A DNA stretch of 64,000 nt from Pavona decussata (GCA_977016875.1 CDRNST010000093.1:5270001-5334000); one strand, 5' to 3'. Shown: positions 23,949 through 49,352, counted from the first letter of the stretch. The notes: generated from the letters alone by a model not told the origin. Program-made: numbers and translations.

Positions 23949-26260
23949 CTAAACTTTCTCCATTGCTGCGGGAGGGCCAACAACTTCTTCTGAAACCATA
24001 AAATCCTCCTAAACAGAAAAAACAAAAACAAAAATCAGTACAGTTACAGAAAGTAGAGTTACTGTAGTCCTTGAATAAGTACCCAATGCACTTCAAATAA
24101 TTTTAAGATATTAGGTGGGAGGCACTTTGACAAGTGGGACACTTATCTAATTTCTCCCAAATCCTGGTTCTGTTCCTCTGGAAGTTCACAGCTTTCACGA
24201 AGAGTGCAATATTTGGGACTCAATATTATTGAAAGAACAATTATTTTGAAGACAAAAGAGCTACATGCAAAACTATACTTGTATCTGGAAAAGAAACTGG
24301 CTTCTTACATTTTAATGTCGAAAATAACTAAATAAATGATTGTAACAATATTAATTTTGTAAAAAAAGAATGTTTTAGCAACATTAAAAATGTTATGCTC
24401 ATCCTTTGCTGGGGATGTTGAGGATGAATACTTATTTGAGGATTTCCAGCATTAAAATTTCTCCTTCTCCATCAATGACTGCAGACAGGTTATGGTAAAC
24501 AAAAAGAATTTATCTTCATTCTAAAATGTTCCCATGTGTAACATGAGACTGGTTTTAAAAACTTACAAAGTTAAGAATCTATAGAGAAACATTTACAAAC
24601 AATTTAGATCTTGGAAAAGAAAGCCCAAGGGTAAATAAAACTGGTTGCTGCAAAATGACTAACCAGGTCATAAATGACTCGCACAATCAATGAACAACTT
24701 GGACAACGAGCCACGTCTTCCCCATTTTCCAACTCTTCCTGTAAATAAACAAAGAGAGAGAAATATAATTATGTCTGTCTGCTTGTAACATAAAAATAAA
24801 TAAATGTTCCCAGGGCCAGTGGGAATTTGGCAATGTTGGTTTTTGTGAAGAGAGGAAAACTTGAGTACCCGGAGAAAACCCTCGGAGCAGAGATGAGAAC
24901 CAACAACAAACTCAACCCACATATGACATCAACACCAGGTGTCGAACCAGGGCCACAATGGTGGGAGGCGAGTGCTCTCACCTCTGCACCATCCCTGCTC
25001 CCCCGTATGTAAAAAATTTCAGCATGTCATGTTATATGATGTGATATGTCATGATTTATGTACTTATTTCTAAACAATATCTACAATGGGATACATGGTT
25101 GTACCTGACTCTAATGTGCAAAGAGTATTAAAATAGAATGTTTTCAGAGTCAGAATAGAAGAAAAATTTCTTGCAAAGCATGAATCTAAATGGAGTTGAC
25201 TATTTTGAAGTCATTATTGCAACTATTAACTTCGTTATTCATTTAAATAATTAATAGTATACAATTGAAATTCAAGCTAAGTCCTTCCAATACTTAATGG
25301 TTGGTTTGCTTGGGGTCTGTCAACATATTCACTTGTTCTGTCATGCCAATCAATGACCAGCGATAGGACCAGTGTGTATATAAAAATAAATATTCATTTG
25401 TTCTCTTCTTAACGTCCCTGAATGTTTACGTCAGTACCCTATCCTTCCTAATGGCCACTTAGAATATTCAACACCCTGACCTTGTCTACAGGAACAGGGT
25501 GAAAAAGATTGCGGATCAGCAGATTTGGACAAGAAAACTGTTTGGGTGTCAGATTAAATGGATTCTTTCCAAGAATTTGAAGATCCTGCAAATGCAGCAG
25601 AATGCAGAGTGTTGCATCTTTATGTTTTATTTTATTTTATTTCATTTTTTATCAAATTCAGGATTGGTGGATTTCATCCTTCCTCCCCCCTCCCCTCCTC
25701 CCTGGGGAAAAACATGCACATGTATACTGGTGTATACACTTGTTTCATGCATTTCTTCTACTGAAGCTGGAATATTTTCATTTCGTGTTGATCAGCGAGG
25801 AATGTACGCCTCTGCCACATTAGCTCCTTAACATGTGAATATCTCCACTATTAAGGTAAAGTTTTCCGGATTCAAATAATTTACTGCCAAAACATTTGTG
25901 GATTGACGGATTTGGTCAAAGCTTTAAGCGACTGGTGGATTTATCACAGAGCCACTTAGCCGAGTAAACATACACAGTCACATACGCTGATTTATGAGTA
26001 CATTTTGCTAGTACGGCAGTAGTGCATGTATAAAATCTTTCCGAACTTAGCTTCCTAAAAATATAATATATAGATGCGCCGATCAAACTGGACCAATTCA
26101 AAACCTTAAAATCCAACCTACTGTTTCGTAAGATAAAAGTTGTTCTACCAACCTTTGTAATTTGAAACTGATCGCCACAAGGGCACGGGTAGAGATAAGT
26201 CTCAGATTCCTCGTCGTATTCAAAGTCTTCAATTTCTACTTCATCGTGAAATACAGCCAT
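23949..26260 (-). CDS. DPH3: Diphthamide biosynthesis protein 3 (CSL zinc finger), 3 exons, 80 aa
   Basis: Exons 26260-26153, 24738-24664, 24008-23949, GT-AG, phase 0; [36 protein letters not shown]|[25 protein letters not shown]|[19 protein letters not shown]. Confidence 0.96.
24810..25004 (-). mobile_element. tRNA-derived SINE-like repeat in DPH3 intron 1
   Basis: Minus strand GGGGAGCAGGGATGGTGCAGAGGTGAGAGCACTCGCCTCCCACC...GGTTCGACACC has A-box and B-box-like motifs followed by a non-tRNA body. Confidence 0.65.
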
Positions 26261-26852: not shown

Positions 26853-27346
26853 TACCGTAGTGTCAGCCCTGCAATCCGTTTGGTTTATTTACATGAAAGT
26901 GACACCTGGCACGTGCTTTTTTACTACAAGGGATCCGGGAACGGAATGTATTCAGAACAGTTTATTTTGCGTCGTGTAGTCTCCTGCATCCAAAAGTTTC
27001 CTATAATAACCTTGTCCCCTTATCGGGCCATGAAGTAATTTTTCTTTGATTGTTCGTATATTTTTGGTACAAGCTTGCCAGGAGCGAATTAGGTACCTGA
27101 TTCGCTCCTGACATTGCCCAATACATTCAATGAGGAGTTTAAAATTCAAGATTTAATTGACTAAAGCTTATAAGTTTTTGGAGTGGCTCCCAATGGATCA
27201 CTGCCCCACCTACTTCAGCTCATGAAGGCACGCAATCACGTTAATTTTATCGAAATTATCCATCTACATCTACAAGGATAATTTGCGACGGGATAAACCT
27301 ATCATCGCAAATATAAGGAAAAACAGAGGTGAAACAGTTCAGTATA

Positions 27347-28285: not shown

Positions 28286-28471
28286 TATTATGTAAATAGA
28301 GACGTGACAGCTGTCAGACGCTAACGGAACTGAAAAGATAAAAGGCCTCTTGTTGACAGGAAGCCAATGAGTGGGCAGAGGAACACGATTATGGAACTTT
28401 CCATATTCAAATAAACTGTACTCGTCCGGCAGTCGGAGACCAGCAGGAACTGCTTGTTGATAGCCATCAAC

Positions 28472-28859
28472 ATGTCACAGAAATGGAAGAAACTGGCCAA
28501 TATGGGAGCTCTAAGGAAACAAGACCATCAAGACGGCCATGTTGATTTGGACAACCTGAGTGAAGTCGAACCTGAGCTTTTCATCAAATTTGTGCGAATC
28601 CCAACGCTCAAAACATACACGAGTCTGATCGCAAAACTTAAAAGCTGCCCCAAAAAATGGCTGACAGAGTTTTTGGTGCTAGGGGGGTTGACAACGCTGT
28701 TCGAAGTTCTGGAAAAACTCTGCGAGCGTGGTCTGGCCAAGTTTTCCGATGCATTTCTGCAACTTGAATGTGTTCGGTGCATTAAAGCTGTGATGAGCGA
28801 TGTGACCGGTTTGGAGTTTATATCCAGAGATCCCACACTCACTACCAAACTCGTGACTG
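28472..28859 (+). CDS. INF2: INF2-like formin, variable first coding exon V1 (N-extension + first part of DID/GBD)
   Basis: ATG 28472 MSQKWKKL...EPELFIKF...WLTEFLVLGGL...LQLECVRCIKAVM...KLVT; donor G|GTGAGT, phase 1 (388 nt). Confidence 0.9.
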
Positions 28860-31800
28860 GTGAGTAAAAGTTGTTTACCTTGTCCAAAATTTATTAAGGT
28901 ATAGTACTGCTTAGTGGTGTAGTTAAAACAAATGTTTAAAATTGCATTTAATAAGGCCAACTGAAGTCTAGTTGTCAGTTTTGAACCAGTTTGGTTTGAC
29001 CATTCAAACGGAACAAAGGCACACAACGACAGTGTTCTGATGTGTTCCCAGATCTTTTTGTGGCCTTTTAAAGACGTATTTGTGTGAGCCAATACACATT
29101 GATCCACTCGGGTGGTTTACCTGATTTAGGTAAACGAATTGGTTTTACGAAAATGCAAGCTTACCTTCTTTCGCATTTTTAATGACTTATTTACCCCTTC
29201 GAAAACGAAACGAATTACTTTTTCGGTGTTACGAAATTCTGAGTTGACATTTTGTCAAAGAAAACTGAAGATTTTCTTTACGACTAAATCCGTAATTCTT
29301 GGGCGATTTAAGTCCTCGCCCCCCGAACAGATATACACCTAAGCAAACTGTTGGATACCCCTGATGTCCCTGACGGAAGCTCTTAAGCTTCAGTAAAACT
29401 TGCCAATATAGCACGTGTATTGTTCCTTTTTCAATATCTTACAAATTCAAGGGTTTCCGATATAAAAACAAATGGTATTTATATAATCTTGAGTTAATTT
29501 TAGGCGAAAAGACTTCTAAAAGGGGGGTAAGAAAGAATAGTTCCAGTCACGATCGCCAATTTTTTGACTGCCTATCTTATTGTAGAATTCGAGCCAAACT
29601 ATTTGCGTTACATTACATAATTGTTTATTATGTTAATCTTCAGAGAACTATATCTGACAGTTTATTCTAATCATTTTGAACTTGAAAATGGTATCATGAC
29701 GACTCGATTTTATCGTTGATTTTTACTTGTTTATCTATATCTTATCAGTACTGTCAATAAAATGAAACATCTTGGAATACTGTCGAAAATATAGAGAAAA
29801 ATTCAATGTTCTCTACACTTCTCCCTTACTGTAAAACAGTAGTGGAAAATCGAAAGAACTATCCTCTCTTGACTTCGTGTAGTCTGCACTGGACTCATGA
29901 AAAATTACACAGAAAAATTGATAAATAACTGTTATAAGAATCAAACAAAAACAAGGCGACCGCAATCTTAAAAAATTGTGCCGCCCAAATTCTGACAACC
30001 TGTCTCTTCAGGCAAATGTTTTGAGGCCGCAATAAGGAGGGGCTTCAGATATTTATAGGTACGAAAGGGTGTTATTTAAAATCACGAGTTTTGAAAAAAC
30101 TTACAATCTTTTCCTAGACAACTACCTGAAAGATAGCACTAGCAGACTGTATATTACGAATTCATTTTTACCTTCACACACAGACATATATAGTTCTGCA
30201 CATTCCGAGGTATGTCCCAAAAGACTGGACTTTAAGAGATCGGTTTTCCTATAGACTGAAACTGACTAATGATTTCACCATTGGTACGCCAAATTTTTGA
30301 AGTATTTCTTTATTGTTTCAATTTAAACATGGGAGGGGTGGCTTAATTGGGGGGGGGGGTATTAAAATATGTAACCTCCAAACGGGGGGCTTATTAGAGT
30401 TAACATCGTCTTCAGCATATATCATAAGATGCCATAAAAACTACAACTGAGGAGATTTTCAAACTGAACACCATTAGATTTACACTGACCGCCAATGAGA
30501 AGGCAGCAACTGGCTACATTGCATTCTACGACTTCCTCTCGACCTTTTGCCCACAATTTACCTCCACATGTTGTTTATGACATCCAGTTCACATAAGAAT
30601 TAATTTTGTTTATCAGCTAATGACAAAATGCGATTAATTAAGAGTGTTGTCCACGTCCCGTTTGATATCGCAGTGACTTAAGAAGTCTTTAGGAAGCAAC
30701 ATTGGCAATCTTGCCTAAAGTGTAAGAAAGTTATGCTTACTTTTAATATCACCACAATTTCTGTTTACCATTGACTGTTAGAGCCAATACGGTATCGTAT
30801 TCAATATATATCGTGCGATGTCATAATGGCTAGGAACTATTGAGAATTTGAGACTGAACACTCTTAGATTTAAAGTACACTAACCACCAATGAGAAATCA
30901 GCAACTAGTTTCCTTACAACTTCCTTTCCACCTTATGCGCAGAATTTACCACCACCGTGTCCGGTTGATTAGAATTTTATCTCAGTGTTTATCAACCAAT
31001 GCCAAAGTTCCATTCATTGAGAGTGTTGTGGTTTGATACGACATTCGTTAAATTAAGAGGGCTTAGAATAATATTGTCCTTGGCAGAAGTTTTTTTCGCG
31101 GATCCCATTGGCAATTCAAAAGAGCTGTTATCATTGAGAAGCTTTCCCACTTGATACTGCAACAGGACGCAATATTTTCTAATTTTTGAAATGATTTCAG
31201 TTTTGTTACAAGTAATTTTTTGTACGTACGTGGTATAAATCTGTTTAAATGTCCTGAATAGGAGAAACTTAACGGCGGTTCCTCGTACGAACGCCAGCTT
31301 TTGAGATCAAAATTCTAATCTGGCTTGAAGTCAAGCCAAATACCGTGTGTTTCTTAGAGAACCAATCTCAGTGTACTTCACTACTGAATACATGATAAAT
31401 GGTAATCCAGGATTGCCAGTTTAACTTTTTAGTCTATGGATGAAATCCTGCATAAACTGCGACAATTTGAAATTTTTGAATTTTGAAATTTTACGACTGG
31501 AATTACCCTATTTCCTTGAACAAGCGACGAGGGACTTGTCTCACACTTCGAATTCTTGTGTATTTAATACTTGACTTTGGTCAAGTTCAACAGTTCAAGT
31601 CCTTGACCACGGTAAATATGTACTATATATGGCAATTTTTTTATTGGTAAGGGTTGAGGCGTTGTTTGAGTTTCCTGGGCACATAAGGGGGTGATTATTC
31701 ACGGGTGGTAGTTGACGAGGAAATACCATTACACTGATACGCTATTTTAATAACGCTAAACTACAATCGACTACAAAAAGAGTCTACGGAAGCATTCAGG

Positions 31801-32862
31801 GGGATTCCCATGTCTCGATGTAGCTAAAGGCCTGCTACCCCGTACAATCATCAAAAAAATCAATGCCTGTTCAATAGCTAGGTTTTAGAGTAAAAAATGA
31901 CAAAATAGCACTCGAAAACCACTTAGTTTTCCTTTCATCATGTTGAGTATTTCCGTTTGATTTGTGTTCAGTATCACTGGTATGAATGACGCCGGAACTC
32001 GCATTTCTCGAACACCCAGTGAACACAAGACTCACAATTAGATCACATTTTCCTGCCATACGCGGCCGTCAGCTTCCTACATTTGATAGTCATCAGTGTA
32101 CACCAGTAAGGCTCGCAACGTGCTCAGCGTACGGCTTGCACGAGGAAGGGGATCATAGTTCATTTCACTCAATAGCCGTGGTCACACTACACAAATTTTT
32201 ACCCAGAGAAAAAGTGTAAAGTTTACTCATAATGAAACCGGGCACATCGGTACAGCCAGCATGTGGGGTTGTCTAGATCTTATAAAAATGACATTTCGGT
32301 CGCCAAGTTGAAGTTTTGGCACGCAAATTAAAAACGGAACCATGCTCGAATCATGCAAGAACCATGCTCTTGCTCGAATGTCAAAGCCAATAAAAGAGAA
32401 GTTTTCGTCTCAGTTTCCTGCTACTTCTAATGTTACCGATTTCAATGGATAATTTGCTTTCCCTAGGAATCAAGTCAAGTTTCCCGATCCCGAGGGCAAA
32501 AGTGTGTAGTGTGACCTTGGTTATGTCTTCCGGCCCTTTCGTTCCCGCCTTTCCACTGGCGCGACGCTGTTGTCCAATCAGATTTCAGATATGCCCCGTC
32601 ACAGTCGACGCGCGACCAACCGAATTCATCCTTTCGTGTCATTATTCAAAATACTTAAACCGATGACATAACTGTAAGTTGTTATTTGAATAGACCTGTT
32701 GGTCGGTAAACATTATCGTCATTGAATAATTTGGTAGACCACCGGAAACATGTGGGCGCGAGGAGGAACTCAAACCATACAAGCCTTGATCGAGTGATTT
32801 TAAACAGAAACTTGTCAAAATTTTTGCCAGAGTAGACCCCGGCTTTCCTGAGAACAGTGGAC

Positions 32863-33247
32863 ATGGCGTTCTGGAGAAGATTGTCGCTGAAAGCCGGGAT
32901 TGGCGTTCCGGACGAGAAGGACGGTGAAAATGATCTCCAGAATTTAAAAGAAGTTGAACCTGAGCTATTTATCAAGTTTTTGCGAATTCCGTCGCTTAAA
33001 ACTTATTCGAGTTTAATCACAAAACTTGAAGACTGTTCCAAAGAATGGTTGAGGGAGTTTTTGGAGCTTGGAGGGTTGACGTCGTTGTTTGAAGTTCTCC
33101 AGAAACTCGGCGAGCGAGGTCTGGCTAAATTTTCCGATGCCTTTTTGCAACTTGAATGCGTTCGATGCATTAAATCTGTAATGAACAATGTGACCGGATT
33201 GGAGTTTATGGCAAGTGATGTTTCGTTGACAAGACATCTTGCAAATG
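32863..33247 (+). CDS. INF2: INF2-like formin, variable first coding exon V2
   Basis: MAFWRRL...EPELFIKF...WLREFLELGGL...LQLECVRCIKSVMN...HLAN; donor G|GTAAGT, phase 1 (385 nt). Confidence 0.9.
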
Positions 33248-36200
33248 GTAAGTTAAGATTATTTGTGTTGTTCTTCAGTGAAGAATGAAGTGTATTCCAA
33301 AAGCAATTATGTGATTAGGTTGGGAGGCGCTGACGTATTTGAATCCATTAGCGTCTTTTGTTTGCCAATATACGATCGGTACGAGAGGGCCGTGAGTTAA
33401 CACATCAAACAAAGTAAATTGCTTTGAATAGTTAGCAGTATCTTGAAACAAAGTTCCTTAAAATCTGAAAGTTAGAGTGAGGAATTTTAATTTACATATA
33501 TTCATGTCTTGTTCATGAGGGTTGTTTTCAAAAGACTGCCAACTGTTGGTGTTTCAAGTGCGTGCGTCACGTTATTTGTGAATGACATTTGTCAATTTTC
33601 AAATGGGCTTTCGTGACTTCTCCGCTGTGAAGCATATGCATATTCATGCAAATAAAGTTTTGTAAAATTTTTACTCTTATTTTCGTCGCTGGCTAGCCCA
33701 TCGAATTTAATAACTCCTTTGAGTTCAAAGGTGCTTGAAGCTTATCAAAAGTCTTATTAGTTGATAAAAAAAAATAGATAACCAAATTAGCGAAGCGTAT
33801 CTTCGTATAATGATATGCAAAAGCTAAGTCGCTCGTACCCACATCACATAGTCAGTAGTATCAAGTTTATTTGTGTTGTCGTATTGAGTGGGCTTGAAAA
33901 GACACAAGGAAAACGGCAGCTCGATCAACGAATTACGTAAATCTGTTTGCATTTTGGATTGTCTAGATTCCTGTGGCGAAAGAGTTATCAGTATTATGAC
34001 TGAAATGAAGACAAACTTTATGATTGTTTTGTCTAGAACAGTAATACTGCAGCAAGATAAGCTCAGAAGAACAAAGGTTTTTACGACTTACAATCATAAT
34101 TCAAATACCTCTAGCGTACTTTGTTTGTGCTTAATTATTTGGCCGTGATTACGGTATACGTATAATTTTTTCTGTACCCTGTGAAAAAAACTGAGCCTGT
34201 GTATGTAATCTTCAAGTGTGACCTTCCAAATTCTTTGTGGTGCTTTAAATTGCTAAATTTCCTCTCAGATATTCGTATTTCCATCTGGGTTTCTGTGTTC
34301 CATTTTTAGGAGGTAAATCGAGGTTAATTAATACTTCGACACAATACTTATCACATAAACTCATTTGTCCATATATTAAATGGGTAAACAGTCGCATCAC
34401 CCACTCTTTGAGTTTGATGCCTGTGTGGCTCAGATCAGAAGGTTGGAGAAAAAATCCGCGTGCAAAGATCGTGATGTTTAGCCGGTTGCTTCGTCATATT
34501 TTGGTGATTTTGTCTAGTGACATATTTTGGGTGTGAAAACATAGTTGAGCGACAGATCTAGGTACCCAGGTCCCTCAGAGCTAGCCGACCATTCATTATT
34601 GATTTATTTTTATTTTTGTTTTTATTGAGTCAATTTGTTTAAAGCGAGCTGTTCAAACAGACCTGATGCCCATGCGCGCGATGAAAGAATTAGTTTATGA
34701 ATCTAGAGCATTTGTTTACGTGTTATTTTAGTATCCATTGCTTTTCTTCGCCTACGGCAAGTTCTCTTATCTTTAGCTGACCAGGCATGCAGCTGCAAAC
34801 TTAGGTTTTAAATATCTATTGCCCTCGGCAATGCTTAGGGTGGGGGTCTTTCTTTAAAAGTTCAGCCTGGCCTTATTGGGATACATTAGCATAAACAACA
34901 AAATTAGACTATAAATTGAAGGAGCTTGGCAAACTTAGTGCTCACTGAACATATCAGAGTGATTTGCTAAACAGTTTTTGTTAAATGACTTTTGAAAGTA
35001 TCTTGAAAGGTTTTACAAAGAATGGTGACTCGCCAAGCCACACAACAGCCTGCAGAGTATGCCAGAACTCGACCTCATGCGTGCAAAGACATTTCATATT
35101 TTACTAGCGTGCACCACGTGCAGTATCATCTTCGACGTTACCTGATGCACTGACGCGTGCAGATTGTACATTTCAGTATAAAACCTCACCTGAAAATCTT
35201 AGTTGTAGGGGTAGAATGATATATTTTCGTTTCAAAGTAACGTAAAAAACGCTTTTTTTTTTAAGTTCTATTCCCATAAAAATTTATCAATGTAAGACAA
35301 ACATATACTTAAATAAGAGTGGAAATTTAACATTCTGAACGGTATGTAGTAAGGGTTATTTTCCAGCAAATTTCTTCAGTAAACTAAATTTGGCGTTCAT
35401 TATGCCAGAAAGTTTTGCGTGCGCACAAAACGCGCGCGAACGATAGTCGCGCGTGTGCCTGCCGGTGCCATGCTGTGCAGACTGAGCCATACATTCTTTG
35501 TAAACTTCGCAGCTATGAAAGCTAAGTTTTTCCCGAGAGAATTGAGCATATCTCACTGATCAGTTCACCCTAATTCCCAAGTTTGACTTGATAATTTCTG
35601 TCATTTGGTTTGTGGTTTCCTTTTGTTCGTAGCGTATTGCTTCACATATGCTAATAACGAAAAATGTAAACAATGACGTCAGCAAAGATTCCCGTATAAA
35701 GTGCGGAAGTTAAACCTCTGAGGCTGGAGTCACGAAGCCATTAAAGTTAAGATGTAACCTAGATATTGTTTCTTTGTGAATCCGGTCCCTGGACTTCCTG
35801 GAAGTTCTAACCACGTATATCAGTGTTTTCAAGATGGCAATCGTCGCGCGGTTTTGAATGAAGACCAATGAAATATTTTTCATAACTAACTATTTTAGTG
35901 TGTCCAGATAAAATGTGAATGGTTTTAAATGAAAGCTACTAAAATTGCATTCAGGAATGGACAAAATACTATCTTAAACATGCCGTGCTCTGAGTTGAAA
36001 AAACTTGAATTGTTTTGGAGGCTTTTGTTTTTGCGTTTGGGCTGAACCTTGATCTCTTGGCAGGCCTCTGTATTTATAAGAGATTCAGCTGAAAAAGAGA
36101 TCATATTCAACTCCCTTCTAGAGTGCCTAGCTTAACCTTTTTTAAGTGGTGTGAATGAAGGCCTGAAGTGCAGTCATTGAAAGTATTATAAGTGTCCTGT

Positions 36201-36929
36201 GTATGCGACACATGCACTATGTTGCTCACAGAAAGCAAAATAAGAAGCTGAACATTTGGCAGCAGTAGTCAGTCCAAGTTACAAGAAATCATTCACCGTA
36301 TTTCACCTGATAATAGAAAGATTTAGAATCGAGTTTATGGGAAACGGCAAACGCGAGATTCGCGTTTATGTTTCCTTGAAAAAAGTGAATACATAGATGA
36401 GAATAATGCAAAATGATTCTGGCCTTTGATGCTGACGCAAAACTACTCAATTTTACTGAGAAGAGGCAAATGTAGGATAAACATGGTCACGTAGTCAACT
36501 CTGCCGTTTGCTGAATGTTACCGGCTTAATCCTTAGGAAATAAAGGCTAAAATTAGTTTTACAGATTATATATTTTCAAACTAGGGAAGGAAAACCTCGT
36601 TGAGGTATACCAGTTGGCTGGAAAAAAGCCGGTTTTTGACAATTATTCCACGAGTTGGCTTCTCGCATGATTCCTATTTGTAAACGTGGTGGTTTGTCAC
36701 GCAATATGCAACTATTAAAGATTTCGTGATCTATCTCGCCTCGTTTTGGGTTTGCACTGATTAGAATAATATTATCCGACAGCTGGGTTTAAAACAAGAG
36801 GACCGTAACCATTTGCAGCTGACAATTACAATTGTTTGCTATGAAAATATCGTCCTTTCGAAACTGTTGACGGACTGAAGTTGTTTGTAGTCACGAATGT
36901 AACATTTTGCTCTCCACAATTTGCTAAAA

Positions 36930-37329
36930 ATGGCAAACTCGGGCTGGAAGAGACTCCGAAAGTCGCCTATCTTTCAGCAGAATGTCCACGTGGAATCAAA
37001 CCAGGGACAATTCAGCAACATCGAACCAGAATTGTGCATTAACCTGCTGCGCATACCATCGCTGAAAAACTTCTCCTCGCTTCACCCTAAACTCGCCAAA
37101 TGCTCAACCGAATGGATGTCAGACTTTCTTTCCCTTGGAGGTCTGGATGTGCTTTTGAACGCTTTGGAGATCCTATCAGCGCGTTTGTCCGCTTCAAGTC
37201 GCCATTTTGCCTTCATGGATGCGTTTGTGGCGATCGAGTGTGTTCAGTGCGTCAAAGAGGTCCTGAACTCTCAAGGAGGAGTGCAGTATTTTCTGACCTC
37301 GCCAGATCTTGTCTGCCAATTAGTTTACG
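36930..37329 (+). CDS. INF2: INF2-like formin, variable first coding exon V3
   Basis: MANSGWKRL...EPELCINLLRIPSLKNF...WMSDFLSLGGL...IECVQCVKEVLNSQGG...QLVY; donor G|GTAAGA, phase 1 (400 nt). Confidence 0.9.
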
Positions 37330-39525
37330 GTAAGAAAATGTTTTCCTGTTGGGCAAAACTATGCTTGCTTTAAATATTCTGCTTTATTAAAACCTTGTTT
37401 GTAATAACAATTGGCGTAAAATTGCCCCGTGGTCTTTGTCCTCGAGTTTCGCACATTTCAGTATTTCACTATTTCAGTTTCTAAAGCTCCGTCACGGAAC
37501 TTGCAATAGGATCTCTTTGTTTCATTTTCGCTTATTTTTACAATGCTTTTCACCCTCTCCTCGGCTGTAAAAACTAAAGATGCAATCATAACTGGCTTTC
37601 TAAAATGTCTGCGCCAAAGACATTTGGTCTACCACCTACTACGCAGCACATTAAGATTCACATACTTCTCGAAGGTTAAATACTCACTGTACTAAATTGG
37701 AAACGTTCAGAGAAAACAAACAGGCGGGGGTATTTTACTTTGCTCGTAAAATGAGCCATTTTAGACAAAGCTATCATATCACAAAAATTAGATAATTTTA
37801 GGCAAAGCTATCATATCACAAAAATTAGATAATTTTATCCTAATTCGCTTTTTATAACAAACGAATCGCGGTTTCCGGTGACAAGTATTATATGCAGTTA
37901 AATCGACAGGATACTAATCCAAATTGGACGTTAAAGGGATTACTTGTACTGGAGTCAAGTGAGAAGACTAAACCACAATGCCGGTTCCTTACGGTGTTCT
38001 GTTTCAAGCTGATTCTTATAAGTTTTACAACGGAAGTCTTTATCTCATAAGAATACCTCTTTGGAGAAAGCGCGCGTGCTCATTATGTGACTTAGAAAAC
38101 ACACAGACTGGAAGTGATTGTCAAAATTGACAAGCACGTTAGGAAGCACCACCGCTCCATGCGTAACTCTTTCCCAGAAGTCACGACCTTTTAAGCTCCA
38201 CTTGTGTTCTATATTTGTTGCTTTAACAATGTTAGAACGCTCAGCACCTCAGTTTAGGTGATGGGGGCGAGGTGGGATGATGTTTGACAAACAGATTTTT
38301 TGTTGAAGGAGTATTGGCAAACATGTTGTTAGTCTCGTCAGTACACGTACGATGCAATCATAAGCATTATCTATGGAATGTTTACCAGCGAAAGGCAAAA
38401 AGACGCCAGGAGACGTGTGGCGTACAAGGCTGATAACTATTACAGAATACCTGAAAACTAATATCCTAATTATGCGACAAGATAATTAATCATAAAAGTA
38501 TCCGATAAGGATGTAACCAGTTTAAAGTTCACGTGAATACTAATTAATTGAGAGTAGTTTCATTGGGATCTAAGTTTTTGTGTCAAAACTGTGCTAACAG
38601 TTAAAACTTAATATCTTCGCTCGTTCGCTCCTTCGGTTTAGTCTTTTAAAATAACGAAATAAAAAATGGGTGACAGAGACCCTTTTAGAAAAACGCCCTT
38701 TTCTTTTAAGGATATGGTGTAGTAAATCAAACGAGTTATCTTTCTAAAATTATAACCGTCCCCGTTTACATACCAGGGGCACCCAAGGATATCTTAAAGT
38801 CCTTAATCGCCTCACAAACTGAAATTCGGATTTAGGTCGTAAAGAAAGTCTACAGTTTTCTTCGGCAGTGTCAGCTCAAAATTACATAACACTGGAAAAC
38901 TAATTTCTTTTGTTTTCGAAGGGGCAAATATGTCATTAAAGATGCGAGAATAGGTTAGCTGGCATTTTCGCAAAACCAACAATAAGCTCGGGAAATAAAA
39001 TTCCATTTCCTAAAACTTTCCGCACTTTAAATTTTCAGCTAAAGTATCCGAACAGATCAATCTGTATTAACTTACACAGATATGTCTTTAAAAGGCCTCA
39101 AAGCGATCTGGAAACACAGGAGACAAATTTTAAGGATTTTGCCTTAATGTTCTCGCTGGGTGCCTCATGTCAGCGATAATTCGTCTTTATTGCAAAAACG
39201 GCTAATGAATTTAGGCGTCTATAGCTTTGGTTTGGTGTTTTTGCTGTACGTTAAGCAAGTCACTTTGATTAATTATGTCAGTGCACATGTCATTCATTTC
39301 TTGCCATAATTCTGAAGAACATTAATACATGAAGTTATTGTCCCTTGGTGCTTTTACGTTTGCATATTTGCAATTTTGTGATCGCTGTTTGTCGCTAAAA
39401 AAGCGAGATTGGCCTGTAGAAAACGGCGCGCTCATTGTTACCATGGAGAATGCAATGATTGGCATTTAAATGGCCCGTGCCCTGCGGGAGCACCAAACTA
39501 CCTGTGAAATGTATTCTGTTCCAAG

Positions 39526-39901
39526 ATGTCGCGAATGGCCGTTAAAAACAAATGGTCTTCTCTGAGAAGACAACTCTCTGGCGCAGATCAAACATGTCTG
39601 CTTTCAAACGAAGCGTCTCCTGAATTTTGCGTTCGATTGTTAAAATCCCCGTCTGTCCAAAACTACCATGGCATTCGAAGCAAGTTGAAGAGTTCTTCAG
39701 ATGATTGGATGGCTGAATTTCTTGATAGAGATGGAATGGAGGTCTTGTTAGGCGCTTTGGAGAGATTAAGCTCAAGGAAATTATTTGTGGACGCGGTTAT
39801 GCTTCTTGAATGTACATGCTGTATCAAATCGGTGTTAAACTCCAAAGCTGGATTAGAATTCATGATTGGAAATCGCGACTTTACGAGAAGACTTGGTCGA
39901 G
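39526..39901 (+). CDS. INF2: INF2-like formin, variable first coding exon V4 (ATG 39526 or 39535)
   Basis: MAVKNKWSSLRRQL...PEFCVRLLKSPSVQNYHGIRSKL...WMAEFL...LECTCCIKSVLNSKAG...RLGR; donor G|GTTAGT, phase 1 (376 nt). Confidence 0.9.
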
Positions 39902-42443
39902 GTTAGTTATTTTCAATCAATTTTTGAAGCTAAGTTTTCTCGTGTCTGTGTGATTGGGAATCTGCTCGTCGCTTATAAATCGTTTGCGAATCAAAGAAAA
40001 TGCTTTTCATGAACTTTAGTTGGCTTATAAAGGTTTGGTATATTGAAACAGTATTTTAGTTTTCATTGAAAATTGCAAGCTGTGCATGTCACCTCTAAAG
40101 GACAAAAGTGCAACGTTTCGCGCCCTTTCTTCGTTCATTCTTGATTAAAACCAAGTTTTCTTTTGTTCCATTACAGGTAAAGCGTTCTAAGCTTAGTATT
40201 TTGATTAAAAATGTGCAAAGAAAATGCCAAAATTTTGCGTTGGAACTCACGAAAATGTCCATCTCTTTGCCTCAGACAGTTTTAATTAAGAGAGATACAA
40301 AAAATATAAAAATAGTAACGTTATGCGAGCCACTAGATGTAATGACCGACAGGTGTTTAACTGAAAGCATTTTTATCCTCTGTTCATAAATTATATTTTC
40401 CTGACAATATGACCACAACTTAGATAACAGTATGGCATGTACATTAGCCCAGACATTTAGACTCTTTTAAACTAAAAACACCATTTTAGTTTTATCAGAG
40501 GTGGGAAAACACAGTTGGACAGAAAATAAATAGATCACCTGTGTTTGAATAGCAGAAGATTCTAATAGATTTTACAGTCAAGCAAACTGCATGAAAAATT
40601 TATCGTTGGCAAAGATTGTGGTTATAAACCTGATTCTTAGTTTTATGACTTGGTTTGTTCCATTTTCTGGGAAGGACCCGCATTCTTTGAGGTTCCAGCT
40701 ATGATAAATGAAATTAATAAATAGAAATTATTTTACAATATTCGACTTAAGGAAAACCAAGTGTTCTCAAGCGTTCCTAAGGATTCCTTTGTCACTTTTA
40801 CTTAATGTTTGTTTTCTTTTCTCATTGTGATTTAGAATTAACGAATGTGATTTTTAAAGATCATAACTCGAGCTTAAATGATATCAAGCACTTTGTTGCG
40901 GACAATACAAGCATTTTTTTGTTGTCTAATGATGTGCTCTCTTTGCAAGAAATGAGACTTATCTAACGGTTGTGATAACATTTTAGATAGACCACCACTT
41001 GTAAATTACGCGAGTTATTGCCTATTTTAAAAGCGAGCAAAACCATGTTTTCTTGCTATTCGCTGCTAGAGACAATGGTATACTCTGTGTCCTCGGGAGG
41101 TTAATTGTAAATACGAGCTACATGTGAGAATTACTGATTTCGGATTGCAAACATTTGTTTCAGTGTCTTGTCTACAGACAAGTGCCTCATGTTGAAGGAT
41201 GGTTGCGCTCGTCTTCGAAGAGCGTGCAACATTTTGTTTCTGTAGACAATCGTCTGGTGATGTGAAAAATTTCGACATTTCCAAATCTGAAAGCTACGCA
41301 TCATACCCAGCCACTAATATATACAGCTCTTTCGACAAAGGTTGTCCAAAAAAGGCGTAAAAGCGTACGCGACAATGCCGAAAGGTAGTCTGGGAAATAC
41401 CCAATAAATTTCAATATAAGTTCAGAATCAATAAACTTCAATAAAATTCAAAATCAATAAATTTCAATAAAAGCTCAGAATCCATATTGTCCGCCATCGC
41501 TTTACCACATACGAATCGGTTCCGTCTCCTGTTGTCGCATTACACGAGAGCAAATACAAAAGATCAATGACACACTGGCTCGGGTACAATGCGTTATTGA
41601 AAACAAAGAGAATGCAAGTGATGAACAGGCACACTAGGACAGAACCAGCAAATCAGATATTCGTATTTTTCCATTCCTGGTTAGTTTGTTAATTTATAAG
41701 GCAGCCGAATAGGTTGCAAACCACTCCGTAATTTTTGTGGTTTCCGTCCTGAATTCACACAGTGTGTGCTTTCTGTTTCTTGAAAGTTCGCTCTGACCGC
41801 AAAACAGACGCCCGTGTTTTGAATCTGAGTCACCTTGGCGATGGCCTGCGTCGCAGACAGTCTATACAATCCCTGGTGTCGAGTTCTCTACAGGTCTTGA
41901 ATGACAAGACAGGCTCTCGAGTGAAAAGTCCGGCTGCAAGGCAGGCTACTTTATACGTCATTTCCGGCGGCTTATCAAGCCGAGGATTCCAAAGAGTTTG
42001 TAATTTGTTTTAAAAAACAGTGATTGTCGTTTATAGAAAACTGAGATAAAAGTAGGAAAACACAACTTTAGGCTACCAGGAGATGTTTACCTAAGCTGTC
42101 GCTTCTGGTGTTGGCGTTTCGGAAATGCCGCTGATCACTTGAGTCCGAAACAAAAAGGTGACCGAAAGATGGTGATTATAATCATTATTAACTAATTCAC
42201 AGCTTTTGAGCAAATAAGTTCCTCTCAGGGGATTTGGCTTTTATTTTACAACCGGACAAATCGCAGCTGCATCAGAGCGGTACGTTCACGACTACATTGA
42301 GGTCAAGCGAGACACTCTCAACGTTGAGTGTGTTCACCCAGAGCTTTACATCTGCAACTAAATCAGTCGCCGCGAAAAAATACGACCTAAAGAACTGGCG
42401 AAGCTGATGTTTTGAAACCAGAGTGTGGCACTTGAACTTACAA

Positions 42444-42846
42444 ATGGCCCTCAAATTCTCGAGACCAGCTAGTTCAAGATGGCGAAAGATTTCTGGAGAG
42501 AACCAAGACACACATTCTTCTGTTCTGTGCGGGCTAATAGCGGATGCAGATCCCGAATTGTGTGTCAAACTCTTGAAAACCCCGTCGATGAAACATTTTT
42601 CCGGGATTCGGCCTCGTCTGGAAAAGCCTGCTAGCGAGGAATGGCTAAGTGAATTCCTTACTCTCGGAGGACTTAACTGTTTGCTTGATGGTTTGTCGTC
42701 TTTGTCTTCTGGTAGTGGACTTACACGTTTCACCGAAGCCCTTGAACAAATCGAGTGTGTAAGGTGCATTAAAGCGGTTATGAATTCTCCAATTGGCTTA
42801 GAGCTAATGACTCGGACCAACGATTTAACTCGGTCGCTGATAAAAG
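42444..42846 (+). CDS. INF2: INF2-like formin, variable first coding exon V5
   Basis: MALKFSRPASSRWRKI...ADPELCVKLLKTPSMKHFSGIRPRLE...WLSEFLTLGGL...IECVRCIKAVMNSPIG...SLIK; donor G|GTAAGA, phase 1 (403 nt). Confidence 0.9.
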
Positions 42847-44072
42847 GTAAGAGAGAATAAATTTTTACCGCCATAAATAAATAGCGTTTGCCGGCATTAG
42901 AGGTTTGCGAACACCTTCCGTCTTCGAAATATTTCAATTTTTATACAAACGTTTTCAGTCCTAATTTCTGCAACGATAACGCGTACCGTTATCGAAATTA
43001 GAATTTTTTTCTTCTAAAGAAATACAGTTACGAATGGCTGTCAAAATTTTTATCTTTGAAAAGCGAGTTGGATCGAATTAATGAGTCAATATAAATTCAC
43101 CTATTGAATCTAGCGCTAGCCTTTATTTGACGTGGTGTGTAAAGAGTCCAGTGAACGAATATTGTTTGTTTGGGATTTACATGTAAAAGGAGGGGGAAAT
43201 TTGCATATGAAAGTTGGTTCTATTTTGCTTTCTACTATAACGACAATATGGCGTTTTTCCAGTTCATTTTCGACTTTATTATGACTGCAGTCAACCGGTT
43301 ACTCACACAATGAAATATTATTGTTGAATCAGTCAACTAAAATCTTTAAATTTTCTCGGAGTACACGTTTGTTACTACTGAGCGTCGATGATCTTTGCTT
43401 CTCTCCTGCCAGGCATGAGGCATTGTTTATGTATTTTATTTGGCTTTTATTTGGGTGTTTGAGCGCGGGAAAAATGTTACGGGGATAGTGAACTATTAAC
43501 AGATACTCAAGCGACGAAAATTACGGGGCAGACGTCACGTGACCTGTTTCGAAGAGCGCGTTTGATGCAGTAAGTGACGTTTCTGTCTTTGATTGGTATA
43601 TCTTAATTTCTGTATTTCCGCTGACGGGTAGGAAGACAAATGGACCTCCAAATCTCCTTCGCTTCTGTTTTCAATCTTCACAAGTACTCGGGTAGGCATT
43701 CGTATTTGCTTGCATGCATTCCACCCATGTGCGTTGCAAACCATGTGATTGTCTTTCGCGTTGCGGTGTTGGCGTGGTGGACAAGAACTTGAATCGACCT
43801 CTCAGATTTTGCGTCCAAATTACGGACACAAAATGCTTTTCAGGAAGACCTTGGCTCCTAAGGTAACTTTGAACAAGGTCGCTACCAAGGTTGGCTTTCA
43901 TCAAATTATGCAACGTTAGCCCCGATCTCATTGGTTGCGTCACCATCAACATTTCAGAAAATACTTTCTGCGTTCGCGGCCACTCATTTTACGCTAGCAG
44001 AATAGAGCCGCATGAGCGTTGGTTTAATACGCTACTACTTCATATATTGTTGCTTTACATTTACTAACTTTT

Positions 44073-44462
44073 AGGATGGTGCCTATCTTTGTGAGTGCGC
44101 ATGCGTTCTGCGCATCTTAGTCCGTTTACGATGTTCCGAGAATCTCGGGGTTATTTTTAAGCACAGTAGAAAGATATTTTTGCGCGGCTTATCAACATGA
44201 GGAAGAAAGCAGATCGAAAGAAGATGCTATTAGAATAAAAAAAAAATGGGGGAAACCACTCATTTATCAGACAACAAGGCGTCAATCAGGACGAAATGCC
44301 ATTACTGTAGAGCATTTTAAAGCTTTTTAGATCTGTTTTTTTTTTTTATGAAAAATGCGAGGTTACCTCCAATTTTCTTTTTGGGTTCTAGTAGTCTTTG
44401 CACAGATCTACTTTTTGCGCATAACGATTAACCACTGAAAAATGCCTTAGCAGGCACCGTCC
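44073..44462. mobile_element. Older copy of the GGACGGTGCC-terminus MITE family
   Basis: GGATGGTGCCTA ... AGGCACCGTCC; interior collinear with 48382-48762; partial third copy at ~59070-59192. Confidence 0.6.
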
Positions 44463-45269
44463 TACGATATGAAAATATAAATGCAGTTATTTTACGTAAG
44501 TCGCAAAAAGAAAAATAGAAAAAACGTCAAACTGATCGGCATCAATATTTGATGTTTGGTAGTATTTTTTTGCTACGTGACCGCTGTTTCCTAGGATAAC
44601 TATCACTGGCGTAGAAATGCAATAATTATCTTTTTGGTCCAAATCATTCAAATTTCAAAAAAAAATATAAAACAAACACTCGTAAGTACTTGCTGCATCA
44701 GAGAGATATTTACAATACATGTCGGTCACAGCTAATTTTGCTTTAAACTGATTGTGAAAATACATGTGTTTTCGGAACTTCCCCAAACGGGCACCTCTCT
44801 TGTTAAAGTAGACATTCAGTCATGTTCCCAGCCTCACACAAACTCTAACAGAGTCTTAACTTGCCAAAAAATGGATACCTCTTAAGCGGCAAGTTGTTTA
44901 AAGTATCAAGGTGTAGATTTACGCGAGGATCAGCCATATTGTAAGCTGTATATACAGATAACCGACCAGAATCTAACTAAATTGTATATTGGGTAGATCT
45001 ATATTCACCTTGATGAATGAATTTTTAATTCTTAAAAGCCATTGTCTGGTCTGAATAAAAAAAATTAGCTTTAGAGTGTTTTGAATGCAATTTGGATGAA
45101 ACAGAACCACAGGAAAGCGCTGCTCAGTAGCTTTCGTTTGAATGATCAAACGAACTCAAAGTTAGGATTCAAAACATGGCACGAAAGACGGAATATGCGG
45201 CGAGTGAAACCGTTGATTTGTTAGAGTAGGATGTTTTCCCATGCAGAACTAGCTTAAAATATATAATGT

Positions 45270-45483
45270 TTTGGGAAAGGATTGATATAGAAATAAATAC
45301 CAAAAAGTGTCAAAAATGGCTTTGAAAGAAACACAGACGTTTCGGGTATATAACCCTTCTCCAGTGTGGAGAAAACCGTTGAATTACGCTACCGGACACA
45401 CGCGCGCATATGAATAGTAACGCGCGCATGCATTAAATTCAATTCAATTATAGCTAAAAATTGAACTTTCCTTTCACCTTTAA
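45270..45483 (-). mobile_element. Short retroposed insert with 16-bp target duplication and hammerhead-like motif (Penelope-like)
   Basis: TTAAAATATATAATGT at 45254-45269 and 45484-45499; minus strand CTGGAGA-AGGGTTATATACCC-GAAAC. Confidence 0.55.
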
Positions 45484-46364
45484 TTAAAATATATAATGTC
45501 TAACATTCAAGACTTGTTACAACAGTGGACTCTGCGCGCTATCTCGCTATCTTTTGCATTCGAATTCCCGCTTTCTTGACCAAAAATTTGTTTTTCTTGT
45601 GCGTTCGTGACAGCAGGAGTCTGCGTTATATAAGCAATGATATTCAATTTCCAGATTCAAGGTACTGTTTGAATGCACCTGCGCTTAAATGAAGAACAAT
45701 TTCAAGTAATGATCACCTAATGGTTGGACTCCAGCTCAATTCAAATTGCACACTTATCTACAAACATGAAAAACCTCACGAACGTTAAATAGATATATTT
45801 TTTGGTTCAGCAAAGCAAAATTTTAATCCAATACCTCATACTTGTTTAAGGATTATATAAATTTATTTACGTCTTGGTGTATTCAACGAGCCTTGTCAAC
45901 AAAACAAACAGTGGAAAATGGTAGCTCATTTGCTATTCCAATTTTAATTACAACTTAGGCCTCTTACTGTAGAAATACTGCCTTAATGAATAACAAAACA
46001 TTAAATAGTATGACATTTGCAAATCAATGTTTCTATTCACAAAAAATCTGCCCTAGTTGCTCCTTTAATATCACTACGGATCTACAGTTCAGTTCGGTTT
46101 ACGTTTTTGTCTCGATTTAATTTCTTGATCGAGAATCTAACGTCCCAAGATTTAATCCTTCACGCGCACGAATTTTAAAAAAGGAAATCATGCTTTATAT
46201 CTCCAGTGGGCAGCGATTTGCATAGGGGAACGTTTAATAACGAGATAAGCCTAAACAGTTTCAGCTTATAATAACTTTTTCGCTGACCGCAAATGGTTTT
46301 CTGATTTATTTTTGTTTAATGGAAGCAAGGTAGTTTCTCTTCCTTGTTGCCTAAATTCGTCATT

Positions 46365-46761
46365 ATGGCTAATTTAAAATGTGCAAAAAGATGGAACGTT
46401 GTGAGGCAACAGTTTAACTGTTCGCGGGATGAAAAGCAAGTTGAGAACATCAACATTTCCAGCGATGTCTCTGCCGAACTGTGCGTCCGTTTGCTCAGCA
46501 CTTCGTTCCAGCAGAATTTTTCCGGACTCAAAACAAAACTTCAAACGAGCTCTGGTCAATGGATTTCAGAATTTCTTATTCAAGGTGGAATGGAAGCTCT
46601 CTTTCAAGCTCTAGAAAGGTTAAGCCGAGGCGGGAGAATGGCGTTTGTGGATGCGTTTATGCAACTGGAGTGCGTGAATTGTATCAAAGCGGTTATGAAC
46701 TCTAAACAGGGGCTGGACTCCATGATACAGAACAAGTCTTTGGTTCGTAGTCTGGCTAAAG
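46365..46761 (+). CDS. INF2: INF2-like formin, variable first coding exon V6
   Basis: MANLKCAKRWNVVRQQF...AELCVRLL...NFSGLKTKL...WISEFLIQGGM...MQLECVNCIKAVMNSKQG...SLAK; donor G|GTTGGC (weaker), phase 1 (397 nt). Confidence 0.88.
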
Positions 46762-48762: not shown

Positions 48763-49352
48763 TTAAAGTTATGGCTTGTATTAATATTGACAACATAAAT
48801 AGAAACTTTGTATTTTTCCATGATTTTATGTTCTTTCATCTCTAATTGCGACGATTTTACTCGCGAAATTTTTACCAGACGATTTTGCACTATTCTCTAA
48901 GCCAAACCCCGCCAAAACTAAAGGCATTTTAATAAGTTAGAACATTTGTCCTGTGTAAGAAAAAATTCACACGACAATTTTGTTCAGTTTTGTTGTACTG
49001 GCTGTCAAGGTAACTTTACCGAGAAGAATTCCTGGATTTTTTTTTTTTCGCGTGAGCGGCACTGCGGGACCATGCAGTTCGGCCACAAACCAACTAGTTC
49101 CCAAACTCTTCCTTTCAGCTCACCTGTAATATTTCTTTGCCCGGCCCAGGCTGGTCAGAAACGATCAGGAGAACTATCTAACCGGTACTGTTAACCCACT
49201 GGCCGGTCAAGACAGCGTAAACAATGAATAATTTACCAGAATTCCATTCCCTGCAGTTTATTTGTAAACCATGTTATTTCTCTCACCAGCTAATAGTTTG
49301 AGTTAAATGGTACATGCAATGCTGATATTCGTTTCTTCTCGTTCAATTTCAG

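What the first reader, a model, noticed from the sequence alone, without database searches (positions are those of the whole stretch)
28288..46365. How is one cassette chosen: separate promoters or mutually exclusive splicing?
Seen, favouring promoters: CCAAT near 28364 (V1) and 32574 (V2); two reverse CCAAT boxes (~39408, ~39458) plus TTTAAA (~39465) before V4; no convincing acceptor before the V1 or V6 ATG. Seen, favouring upstream exons: acceptor-like sites before V2 (TTTTTGCCAG, 32830) and V4 (TTCTGTTCCAAG|ATG). V2 also has a donor (GTAAGT, 32674), which would give it a private 157-nt 5' UTR intron. Known: human INF2 has a non-coding exon 1. Inference: separate promoters are more likely, but a V1 transcript must skip five cassettes over ~20 kb, so a selection mechanism is needed either way.
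Basis: partly seen in the sequence, partly recalled or inferred. Interest (0 to 1): 0.7.

Follow-up and report, generated by a model that had tools for sequence, protein, structure and literature searches.

The report
Coral formin gene with six alternative first exons
A stony-coral INF2-type formin gene carries six tandem alternative first coding exons, and cross-species comparison suggests each is switched on by its own promoter, as in the known UGT1A and protocadherin clusters, so no special exon-skipping mechanism is needed.

Summary
The window is from a stony coral, not human. It holds one INF2-like formin gene with six paralogous first coding exons, V1-V6. Each has its own ATG, an in-frame stop upstream and a phase-1 GT donor. 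Shared exons follow from 49353.

Comparison with seven other coral loci and Nematostella separates signal from noise.
- **Conserved:** the V2 CCAAT box, and the V4 module (X-box-like site, reverse CCAAT, TTTAAAT) in all six coral loci that carry V4.
- **Not conserved:** the V1 CCAAT, the V2 GTAAGT donor (lost even in the sister species) and both acceptor-like sites.

V4, V5 and V6 have cassette-specific conserved upstream blocks, while mid-intergenic controls have none. No conserved leader exon lies between the head-to-head DPH3 gene and V1. Acceptor-like sites upstream of cassettes score no better than random windows.

Best reading (confidence 0.72): a variable-first-exon cluster of the UGT1A type, with one promoter per cassette. 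Cassettes lacking an acceptor are removed as intron, so nothing has to be skipped.

No spliced transcript could be retrieved, so start sites remain inferred. The cassette order, with DPH3 upstream, is the same in Nematostella, so the array predates the coral-anemone split. It is a new member of a known kind. The scan had noted this stretch before.

The parts
26150..26260 (-). DPH3-like exon 1 (CSL zinc ribbon), head-to-head with V1. It bounds the space available for any shared leader exon.
   Evidence: ORF. It is 97% identical to L008 and 92% to Nematostella L016, both in the same head-to-head position; Pfam Zn_ribbon_CSL.
28472..28859 (+). V1 cassette: ATG to phase-1 donor (G|GTGAGT).
   Evidence: Drf_GBD E 1.5e-13; boundaries; orthologues in L004, L008, L007, L001.
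32574..32748 (+). V2 upstream elements: CCAATCAGAT (32574) and ETS-like ACCGGAAA (32741).
   Evidence: CCAATCAGAT lies 289-376 nt upstream of V2 in 5 of 7 copies; L006 keeps the CCAATCAG core. ACCGGAAA lies 107-150 nt upstream in five V2 copies.
32863..33247 (+). V2 cassette: ATG to phase-1 donor (G|GTAAGT).
   Evidence: Drf_GBD E 1.7e-13. It is 67% aa and 82% nt identical to V1.
33248..33365 (+). Conserved intron stretch directly after the V2 donor; contains GGCGCTGACGT.
   Evidence: Noncoding-only blastn E 6e-14 to L008 and 4e-9 to L004; alignment.
36930..37329 (+). V3 cassette: ATG to phase-1 donor (G|GTAAGA).
   Evidence: Drf_GBD E 4.7e-9; clade support 99. Upstream conservation is weak.
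39427..39525 (+). V4 proximal promoter-like module: GTTnCCATGGAGA (X-box-like, 39437), reverse CCAAT (39458), ATTTAAAT (39463), then a conserved leader.
   Evidence: 80-90% identical in five coral species. Noncoding-only blastn E 4e-41, 1e-23 and 1e-22. The 17-mer is unique to this position in six loci.
39526..39901 (+). V4 cassette: ATG to phase-1 donor (G|GTTAGT, with an unusual T at +3).
   Evidence: Drf_GBD E 1e-10; clade support 100.
40565..40632 (.). Conserved noncoding element between V4 and V5, with a GGTTATAAAC core. Function unknown: enhancer or extra promoter.
   Evidence: blastn to L002, L004 and L009; alignment; no Rfam match and no excess RNA structure.
42175..42238 (+). V5 upstream conserved block, 269-206 nt before the ATG.
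   Evidence: Aligned in five species; noncoding blastn E 1.6e-14 to L002 and 1e-4 to L004/L009.
42444..42846 (+). V5 cassette: ATG to phase-1 donor (G|GTAAGA).
   Evidence: Drf_GBD E 4.6e-9; clade support 99.
45896..46364 (+). V6 upstream conserved region; the strongest part is 45896-46069.
   Evidence: blastn E 5e-46 (L002) and 7e-38 (L009) on noncoding sequence only; alignments.
46365..46761 (+). V6 cassette: ATG to phase-1 donor (G|GTTGGC, weak but conserved).
   Evidence: Drf_GBD E 3.9e-17; clade support 98.
49216..49352 (+). Conserved intron upstream of the first constant exon, including an acceptor-like TTATTTCTCTCACCAG 63 nt before the real acceptor.
   Evidence: blastn to L002 and L009; alignment.
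49353..49468 (+). Constant exon 2 (phase-1 acceptor ...tttcag|CT), the shared target of all six donors.
   Evidence: It is 78-80% identical to amphioxus and starfish INF2 directly after their GBD.
50259..60118 (+). Further constant exons: FH3/DID (50259-50421, 52403-52569), the FH1 proline-rich exon (about 53250-54670), FH2 exons (N gap at 56036-56196) and a DAD/WH2-like exon (about 59714-60100).
   Evidence: Open segments; tblastn with INF2 homologues; exon boundaries.

Best explanation
The locus is a variable-first-exon gene cluster in a stony-coral INF2-like formin. Six paralogous first coding exons each encode an alternative GBD/DID head, and each has its own start codon and 5' splice site.

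Each cassette is transcribed from its own upstream promoter. The promoters differ from one another, as in UGT1A. They do not share a common element, as protocadherin promoters do.

The donor of the transcribed cassette is spliced to the acceptor of constant exon 2 at 49353. Cassettes further downstream lack 3' splice sites, so they are not recognised as exons and are removed as part of the first intron. Cassette choice is therefore promoter choice, and no separate skipping mechanism is required.

**Shown here:** the exon anatomy, conservation of cassettes and donors, cassette-specific conserved upstream blocks, and the absence of conserved acceptors or a conserved leader.

**Inferred:** that the conserved blocks are promoters, where the start sites lie, and that each mRNA carries one cassette.
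For: Anatomy:
- Six Drf_GBD exons lie on one strand. Each has an ATG, an upstream in-frame stop and a phase-1 donor. The donor fits the phase-1 acceptor of exon 2.
- These are the only six such exons in the 602-Mb genome.
- Full-length INF2 homologues align to each cassette and then to the same downstream exons.

Conservation of the array:
- The order V1..V6-C2 is conserved in other corals.
- Nematostella has DPH3(-) followed by five cassettes in the same order.
- Each cassette type forms a supported clade.
- The phase-1 donor is kept in nearly all orthologues.

Promoter-type evidence:
- Noncoding-only blastn finds conserved proximal blocks for V4 (E 4e-41, 1e-23, 1e-22), V6 (5e-46, 7e-38) and V5 (2e-14). 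Five mid-intergenic controls find nothing.
- The V4 block holds an X-box-like site, a reverse CCAAT and ATTTAAAT at fixed spacing, 55-100 nt from the ATG, in five species.
- V2 keeps CCAATCAGAT and ACCGGAAA.
- ACCGGAAA recurs 107-160 nt upstream of V1, V2 and V3 copies in several species.

Against a shared leader:
- Between DPH3 exon 1 and V1, nothing is conserved between the window and L008.
- Acceptor-like sites upstream of 36 cassettes score no better than random 250-nt windows (mean 5.6 vs 6.4) and are not positionally conserved.

Precedent:
- Cell-type-specific alternative promoters have been validated in Nematostella (bioRxiv 10.1101/2025.07.01.662323).
Against: - There is no transcript, CAGE or chromatin evidence. 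Three protein-database searches retrieved only unspliced genomic ORFs for corals.
- V1 and V3 have little conserved upstream sequence, so their promoters are not visible by footprinting.
- The conserved blocks of V5 (206-269 nt upstream) and V6 (about 300-470 nt upstream) lie far enough from the ATG that private non-coding leader exons cannot be excluded.
- The acceptor scoring matrix is crude. True constant-exon acceptors scored 2.4-9.8, overlapping the random maximum, so that test has low power.
- Conserved noncoding blocks could be enhancers or splicing elements rather than promoters.
Confidence: 0.72

Rival explanations
1. There is a single promoter and a shared non-coding leader exon upstream of V1. 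The six cassettes are internal, mutually exclusive exons, and one is chosen by splicing regulation (Dscam/Mhc type).
For: - From general knowledge, human INF2 has a non-coding exon 1, so the homologous ATG exon is internal there.
- Acceptor-like sites exist in the window before V1 (score 10.5), V5 and V6.
- All cassettes share the same phase.
- Intron sequence after the V2 donor and before the C2 acceptor is conserved.
Against: - No conserved block exists between DPH3 and V1. The DPH3 head-to-head position holds from Nematostella to corals, leaving about 1-2 kb for a leader.
- Acceptor-like sites are not enriched and not positionally conserved. The V4 and V2 candidates are lost in relatives.
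- RNAduplex found no excess pairing between the conserved C2-upstream intron and the introns after each donor (z from -2.05 to +1.29 over six tests).
- Promoter-type motifs are conserved directly upstream of V2 and V4.
Confidence: 0.08
2. Only some cassettes are used, for example the proximal V6. The others are decaying duplicates that are not normally expressed.
For: - Gene models in public annotations join only the proximal cassette to the constant exons (Nematostella P0318).
- V1 and V3 lack clear conserved promoters.
- One V3 copy in L001 lacks an obvious donor.
Against: - All six ORFs are intact with donors in the window and in most orthologues.
- Each type forms a clade spanning many coral taxa at 65-99% identity, while the flanks are unalignable.
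- The order is preserved to Nematostella. That depth of purifying selection is incompatible with unused exons.
Confidence: 0.1
3. Each cassette is capped by spliced-leader trans-splicing at an acceptor in front of its ATG.
For: Acceptor-like AGs occur close to some ATGs (V4 at 0, V2 at -5 and -33). SL trans-splicing exists in hydrozoan cnidarians (general knowledge).
Against: From general knowledge, SL trans-splicing has not been found in Anthozoa. The AGs are not conserved.
Confidence: 0.02

Closest known systems
UGT1A (UGT1) variable-first-exon cluster of vertebrates
   Same: A tandem array of paralogous first coding exons, each with its own ATG and donor, all spliced to one set of constant exons. 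The upstream regions differ from one cassette to the next, which suggests tissue- or cell-type-specific promoters (PMC3325998, PMC1885805).
   Different: The protein is a cytoskeletal formin, and the variable part is its N-terminal regulatory GBD/DID head rather than a substrate-binding domain. There are six exons of about 390 nt. The lineage is cnidarian. Promoter activity is not demonstrated.
Clustered protocadherins (Pcdh alpha/gamma)
   Same: Variable first exons spliced to constant exons. Downstream variable exons are removed as intron. Choice is made at the promoter.
   Different: No sequence element shared by all cassette promoters was found (no 7-mer conserved upstream of 4 or more cassette types). 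A stochastic choice of the CSE/CTCF type is therefore not indicated.
Mutually exclusive exon clusters (Dscam exon 4/6/9, insect Mhc)
   Same: Tandem duplicated exons of equal phase, of which one is expected per mRNA.
   Different: The cassettes carry the start codon. They lack conserved 3' splice sites and no common upstream exon was found. No docking/selector complementarity was detected.
Vertebrate INF2
   Same: The same domain order: GBD/DID, FH1, FH2 and a DAD/WH2-like tail. The cassette corresponds to the first coding exon, and its boundary with the exon beginning ALDT.N matches deuterostome INF2.
   Different: Deuterostome INF2 homologues aligned here have one such N-terminal exon per protein. 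Hexacorals have five to seven or more alternatives.

Membership tests
Variable-first-exon gene cluster (UGT1A/Pcdh organisation) | Tandem paralogous exons in one orientation upstream of shared constant exons | tested here: met
   Six Drf_GBD exons at 28.5-46.8 kb with constant exons from 49353; these are the only copies in the genome.
Variable-first-exon gene cluster (UGT1A/Pcdh organisation) | Each variable exon has its own start codon and a 5' splice site compatible with the first constant exon | tested here: met
   ATG, upstream in-frame stop and phase-1 GT donor in all six; the phase-1 acceptor lies at 49353. Donors are conserved in orthologues.
Variable-first-exon gene cluster (UGT1A/Pcdh organisation) | Variable exons lack functional 3' splice sites | tested here: inconclusive
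   There is no enrichment (mean 5.6 vs 6.4 for random windows) and no positional conservation of acceptor-like sites. The scoring matrix has low power.
Variable-first-exon gene cluster (UGT1A/Pcdh organisation) | Each variable exon is preceded by its own promoter | tested here: inconclusive
   Cassette-specific conserved upstream blocks with CCAAT, TATA-like or ETS-like motifs exist for V2, V4, V5 and V6. V1 and V3 are weak. No TSS data are available.
Variable-first-exon gene cluster (UGT1A/Pcdh organisation) | One variable exon per mRNA, spliced to the constant exons | not testable with these tools
   No spliced coral transcript was retrieved. The only support is a Nematostella gene model that joins the proximal cassette to the constant exons.
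Clustered protocadherin type specifically | A conserved sequence element shared by all variable-exon promoters | tested here: not met
   No 7-mer is conserved upstream of 4 or more of the 6 cassette types. At DNA level only the V1 and V2 coding parts resemble each other.
Mutually exclusive internal exon cluster (Dscam/Mhc type) | A common upstream exon and a 3' splice site in front of every alternative exon | tested here: not met
   No conserved block lies between DPH3 and V1, and acceptor candidates are not conserved.
Mutually exclusive internal exon cluster (Dscam/Mhc type) | Docking/selector RNA base pairing | tested here: inconclusive
   RNAduplex of the conserved C2-upstream intron against the 250 nt after each donor gave z from -2.05 to +1.29, not significant over six tests. 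Only one candidate docking region was tried.
INF2 (inverted formin) family | N-terminal GBD/DID followed by FH1, FH2 and a C-terminal DAD/WH2 | tested here: met
   Drf_GBD. FH3-region exons are 58-80% identical to amphioxus and starfish INF2. A proline-rich FH1 exon and a DAD-like exon appear in the open segments. FH2-region tblastn hits. The best full-length relatives are named inverted formin-2. The WH2/DAD assignment rests on recognising the motif by eye.

The most novel reading that the evidence does not exclude
Hexacorals have kept, since before the coral-anemone split, a five- to seven-member array of alternative first exons. The array swaps the autoinhibitory and regulatory GBD/DID head of their single INF2 formin under cassette-specific promoters. 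One of these (V4) carries an RFX-type X-box next to an NF-Y box, which may point to a ciliated-cell isoform. This would be a UGT1A-like diversification device applied to an actin regulator, and it has apparently not been described. Public annotations split it into separate small 'genes'.
Probability: 0.55. Interest if true: 0.6.

Novelty: new member of a known kind. Interest (0 to 1): 0.45.

Why it matters
In mammals the INF2 N-terminal DID/GBD is the part that sets autoinhibition and partner binding. An ancient, conserved set of interchangeable heads, each with its own regulatory DNA, would mean that corals and anemones tune one formin to different cell types by promoter choice rather than by gene duplication.

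It also has a practical side. Gene predictors mis-annotate the array, either as separate 130-150 aa proteins or as chimeras of several cassettes (Pocillopora P0001, Orbicella P0282, Nematostella P0080 and P0335). Expression and orthology studies of coral INF2 are therefore likely to be wrong at the 5' end.

It can be tested directly with existing Nematostella chromatin and long-read data.

Tried and rejected
**Transcript evidence.** Three protein-database searches were meant to pull out spliced products and their 5' UTRs.
- Queries: the cassette profile A2; profile A4, with the window's exons as separate rows against a sea-cucumber backbone; and the Nematostella partial protein, constant region only.
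- Corals returned only single-exon genomic ORFs that read through the donor.
- The representative search gave deuterostome, arthropod and brachiopod INF2 but no full-length coral protein.
Exons were always given by reference.

**Shared promoter motif.** No 7-mer is common to the cassette types. Self-blastn shows no DNA similarity between cassette flanks.

**Docking/selector pairing.** Not significant (the first attempt timed out).

**CpG islands as promoter marks.** The whole formin locus has CpG o/e of 0.9-1.15, so no islands stand out.

**V4 module in Nematostella.** A look-alike (TTACCATGA...CATTGGTTAATATGGCCCG) lies about 300 nt upstream of the V4-like cassette. Its local alignment score equals that of other places in the locus, so it is not above chance.

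**Structured RNA.** Rfam found nothing credible in 26-50 kb (one mir-2209 hit at 28 bits against a gathering score of 70, inside the palindrome). The V4-V5 conserved element has no excess structure.

**Literature.** Searches found no description of an INF2 or formin first-exon array.
Full report
**What the window is**

The window is not human. The cassettes' closest named relatives are from stony corals: Pocillopora, Oculina, Desmophyllum and Orbicella. The assembly is 602 Mb. The N run at 56036-56196 was left untouched.

**Anatomy**

The + strand between 28.4 and 46.8 kb carries six open reading frames that align with each other: V1 and V2 are 67% identical, the other cassettes 32-38% identical to V1. 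All six match Pfam Drf_GBD.

| Cassette | ATG to exon end | Donor |
|---|---|---|
| V1 | 28472-28859 | GTGAGT |
| V2 | 32863-33247 | GTAAGT |
| V3 | 36930-37329 | GTAAGA |
| V4 | 39526-39901 | GTTAGT |
| V5 | 42444-42846 | GTAAGA |
| V6 | 46365-46761 | GTTGGC |

- Each cassette starts at an ATG preceded by an in-frame stop, and each ends at a GT donor in phase 1.
- The next exon starts at 49353 behind ...tttcag, also in phase 1. It encodes [17 protein letters not shown]..., which in amphioxus, starfish and other INF2 proteins follows directly after the GBD.
- Downstream lie FH3 exons, a proline-rich FH1 exon, FH2 exons and a DAD-like exon.
- The best full-length relatives are all named inverted formin-2.
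- The genome has no other copy of the cassette.
- A DPH3-like gene lies head-to-head with V1, 2.2 kb away.

All the listed motifs exist at the stated positions. CCAAT, however, occurs at chance frequency in the region: 20 observed against about 20 expected. Their value can only be judged by conservation.

**Related loci**

Using proteins from the first search, I fetched the orthologous arrays from seven other coral loci and from Nematostella.

- The order V1-V2-V3-V4-V5-V6-C2 is conserved.
- Some species have extra V1, V2 or V3 copies.
- Nematostella has TMEM185A, DPH3(-) and then five cassettes in the same order: V1/2-like, V3-like, V4-like, V5-like, V6-like. A JGI model joins the last one to the constant exons.
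- A tree puts each cassette type in its own supported clade, and all cnidarian cassettes together against deuterostome INF2 heads.
- The phase-1 donor is retained in nearly all orthologues, including the unusual +3 T of V4 and V6.

The array is therefore old, predating the anemone-coral split, and every cassette is under purifying selection.

**Promoters versus splicing**

*Upstream conservation.* Noncoding sequence alone, 500 nt upstream of each ATG, was compared by blastn with the distant corals.

| Region | Result |
|---|---|
| V4 upstream | E 4e-41, 1e-23, 1e-22 |
| V6 upstream | E 5e-46, 7e-38 |
| V5 upstream | E 2e-14 |
| V3 upstream | E 0.004 (marginal) |
| V1, V2 upstream | no hit |
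| Five mid-intergenic controls | no hit |

*V4 block.* This is the clearest case. GTTnCCATGGAGA (RFX X-box-like, varying exactly at the N position) is followed by ATGATTGGC (reverse CCAAT) and ATTTAAATGG. All lie 55-100 nt from the ATG, at fixed spacing, in five species. The 17-mer GATTGGCATTTAAATGG occurs only there in 228 kb.

*V2, V1 and V3.* V2 keeps CCAATCAGAT 289-376 nt upstream in 5 of 7 copies, and ACCGGAAA 107-150 nt upstream. ACCGGAAA also sits 119-160 nt upstream of V1 and V3 copies in other species.

*Sites that fail the test.*
- The V1 CCAAT is not conserved.
- The V2 GTAAGT is TTAAGT in the near-identical locus L006.
- The AG before the V4 ATG is AAA in two species.

*Acceptor-like sites.* The best site within 250 nt upstream of 36 cassettes scores no higher than in random windows (5.6 vs 6.4), and its position jumps between species. 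This matrix is crude, so the lack of positional conservation carries more weight than the score.

*Leader exon.* Between DPH3 exon 1 and V1, nothing is conserved between the window and L008. In the window that space is partly filled by a 458-bp palindrome and an inverted-repeat-flanked insertion.

*Other checks.* No motif is shared by all cassette types. No docking/selector-type pairing was detected.

**Interpretation**

The pattern fits the known variable-first-exon organisation: own ATG, own donor, distinct conserved promoter-type elements, no conserved acceptor and no conserved leader. It is closer to UGT1A (distinct promoters; PMC3325998, PMC1885805) than to protocadherins (a shared promoter element).

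Cell-type-specific alternative promoters are documented in Nematostella.

**What is not shown**

- No start site or splice junction was seen. The protein collections returned only unspliced genomic ORFs for corals.
- V1 and V3 promoters are not visible by footprinting.
- The V5 and V6 conserved blocks lie far enough upstream that private non-coding leader exons remain possible.
Profile A4 held the window's exons as separate referenced rows.

**Verdict**

The promoter reading is supported (confidence 0.72), and a shared-leader splicing model is unlikely (0.08). This is a new member of a known kind, of moderate interest. The same stretch was already noted twice by the first-stage scan.

Noticed in passing
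window 26395-26852: A 458-bp near-perfect palindrome (95% self-complementary) lies in the DPH3-V1 intergenic region. A weak mir-2209 look-alike (28 bits, below gathering) sits at its centre.
   Followed up: partly
window 27344-27448 and 28166-28288: Inverted repeats flank about 0.9 kb just upstream of the V1 proximal region. The right-hand side includes three tandem GGCCGCTTAAT units that other species lack, so this is probably a transposon insertion.
   Followed up: partly
window 40565-40632: A conserved noncoding element between V4 and V5 (core GCATGAAAAATTTATCGTTGGCAAAGATTG.GGTTATAAAC) is shared with L002, L004 and L006. It has no RNA structure signal and its function is unknown.
   Followed up: partly
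window 49262-49289: A conserved acceptor-like tract (TTATTTCTCTCACCAG) lies 63 nt upstream of the true exon-2 acceptor. In L002 it is followed by GTTAGT, like a recursive splice site, but not in the window or L009.
   Followed up: partly
window 39902 and 46762: The V4 and V6 donors have T at +3 (GTTAGT, GTTGGC), which is rare. It is conserved in orthologues, whereas V1 and V2 have consensus donors. This may limit their use as cryptic donors in transcripts started upstream.
   Followed up: partly
window 1-26300 versus 26301-64000: CpG observed/expected is 0.48-0.64 over the upstream genes and 0.74-1.15 from 26.3 kb onward, with 0.89-1.15 over the variable-exon region. This suggests the formin gene is not germline gene-body methylated.
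   Followed up: partly
window 33248-33365: The intron directly after the V2 donor is conserved in L008 and L004 and includes a CRE-like GCTGACGT.
   Followed up: partly
L001, L007, L008: Copy number varies between corals. L001 has three V1-like and two V3-like cassettes interleaved. L008 has a 6.1-kb tandem duplication of V2. L007 has two V2-like copies 14 kb apart.
   Followed up: partly
proteins P0001, P0282, P0080, P0335, P0028: Public annotations mishandle the array. The Pocillopora meandrina model strings pieces of three cassettes together. The Orbicella, Oculina and Nematostella models call single cassettes as separate 130-150 aa proteins.
   Followed up: partly
window 62310-62609: An open frame with the C-terminal motif typical of non-LTR retrotransposon ORF2 tails lies in the last intron of the formin gene.
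   Followed up: no
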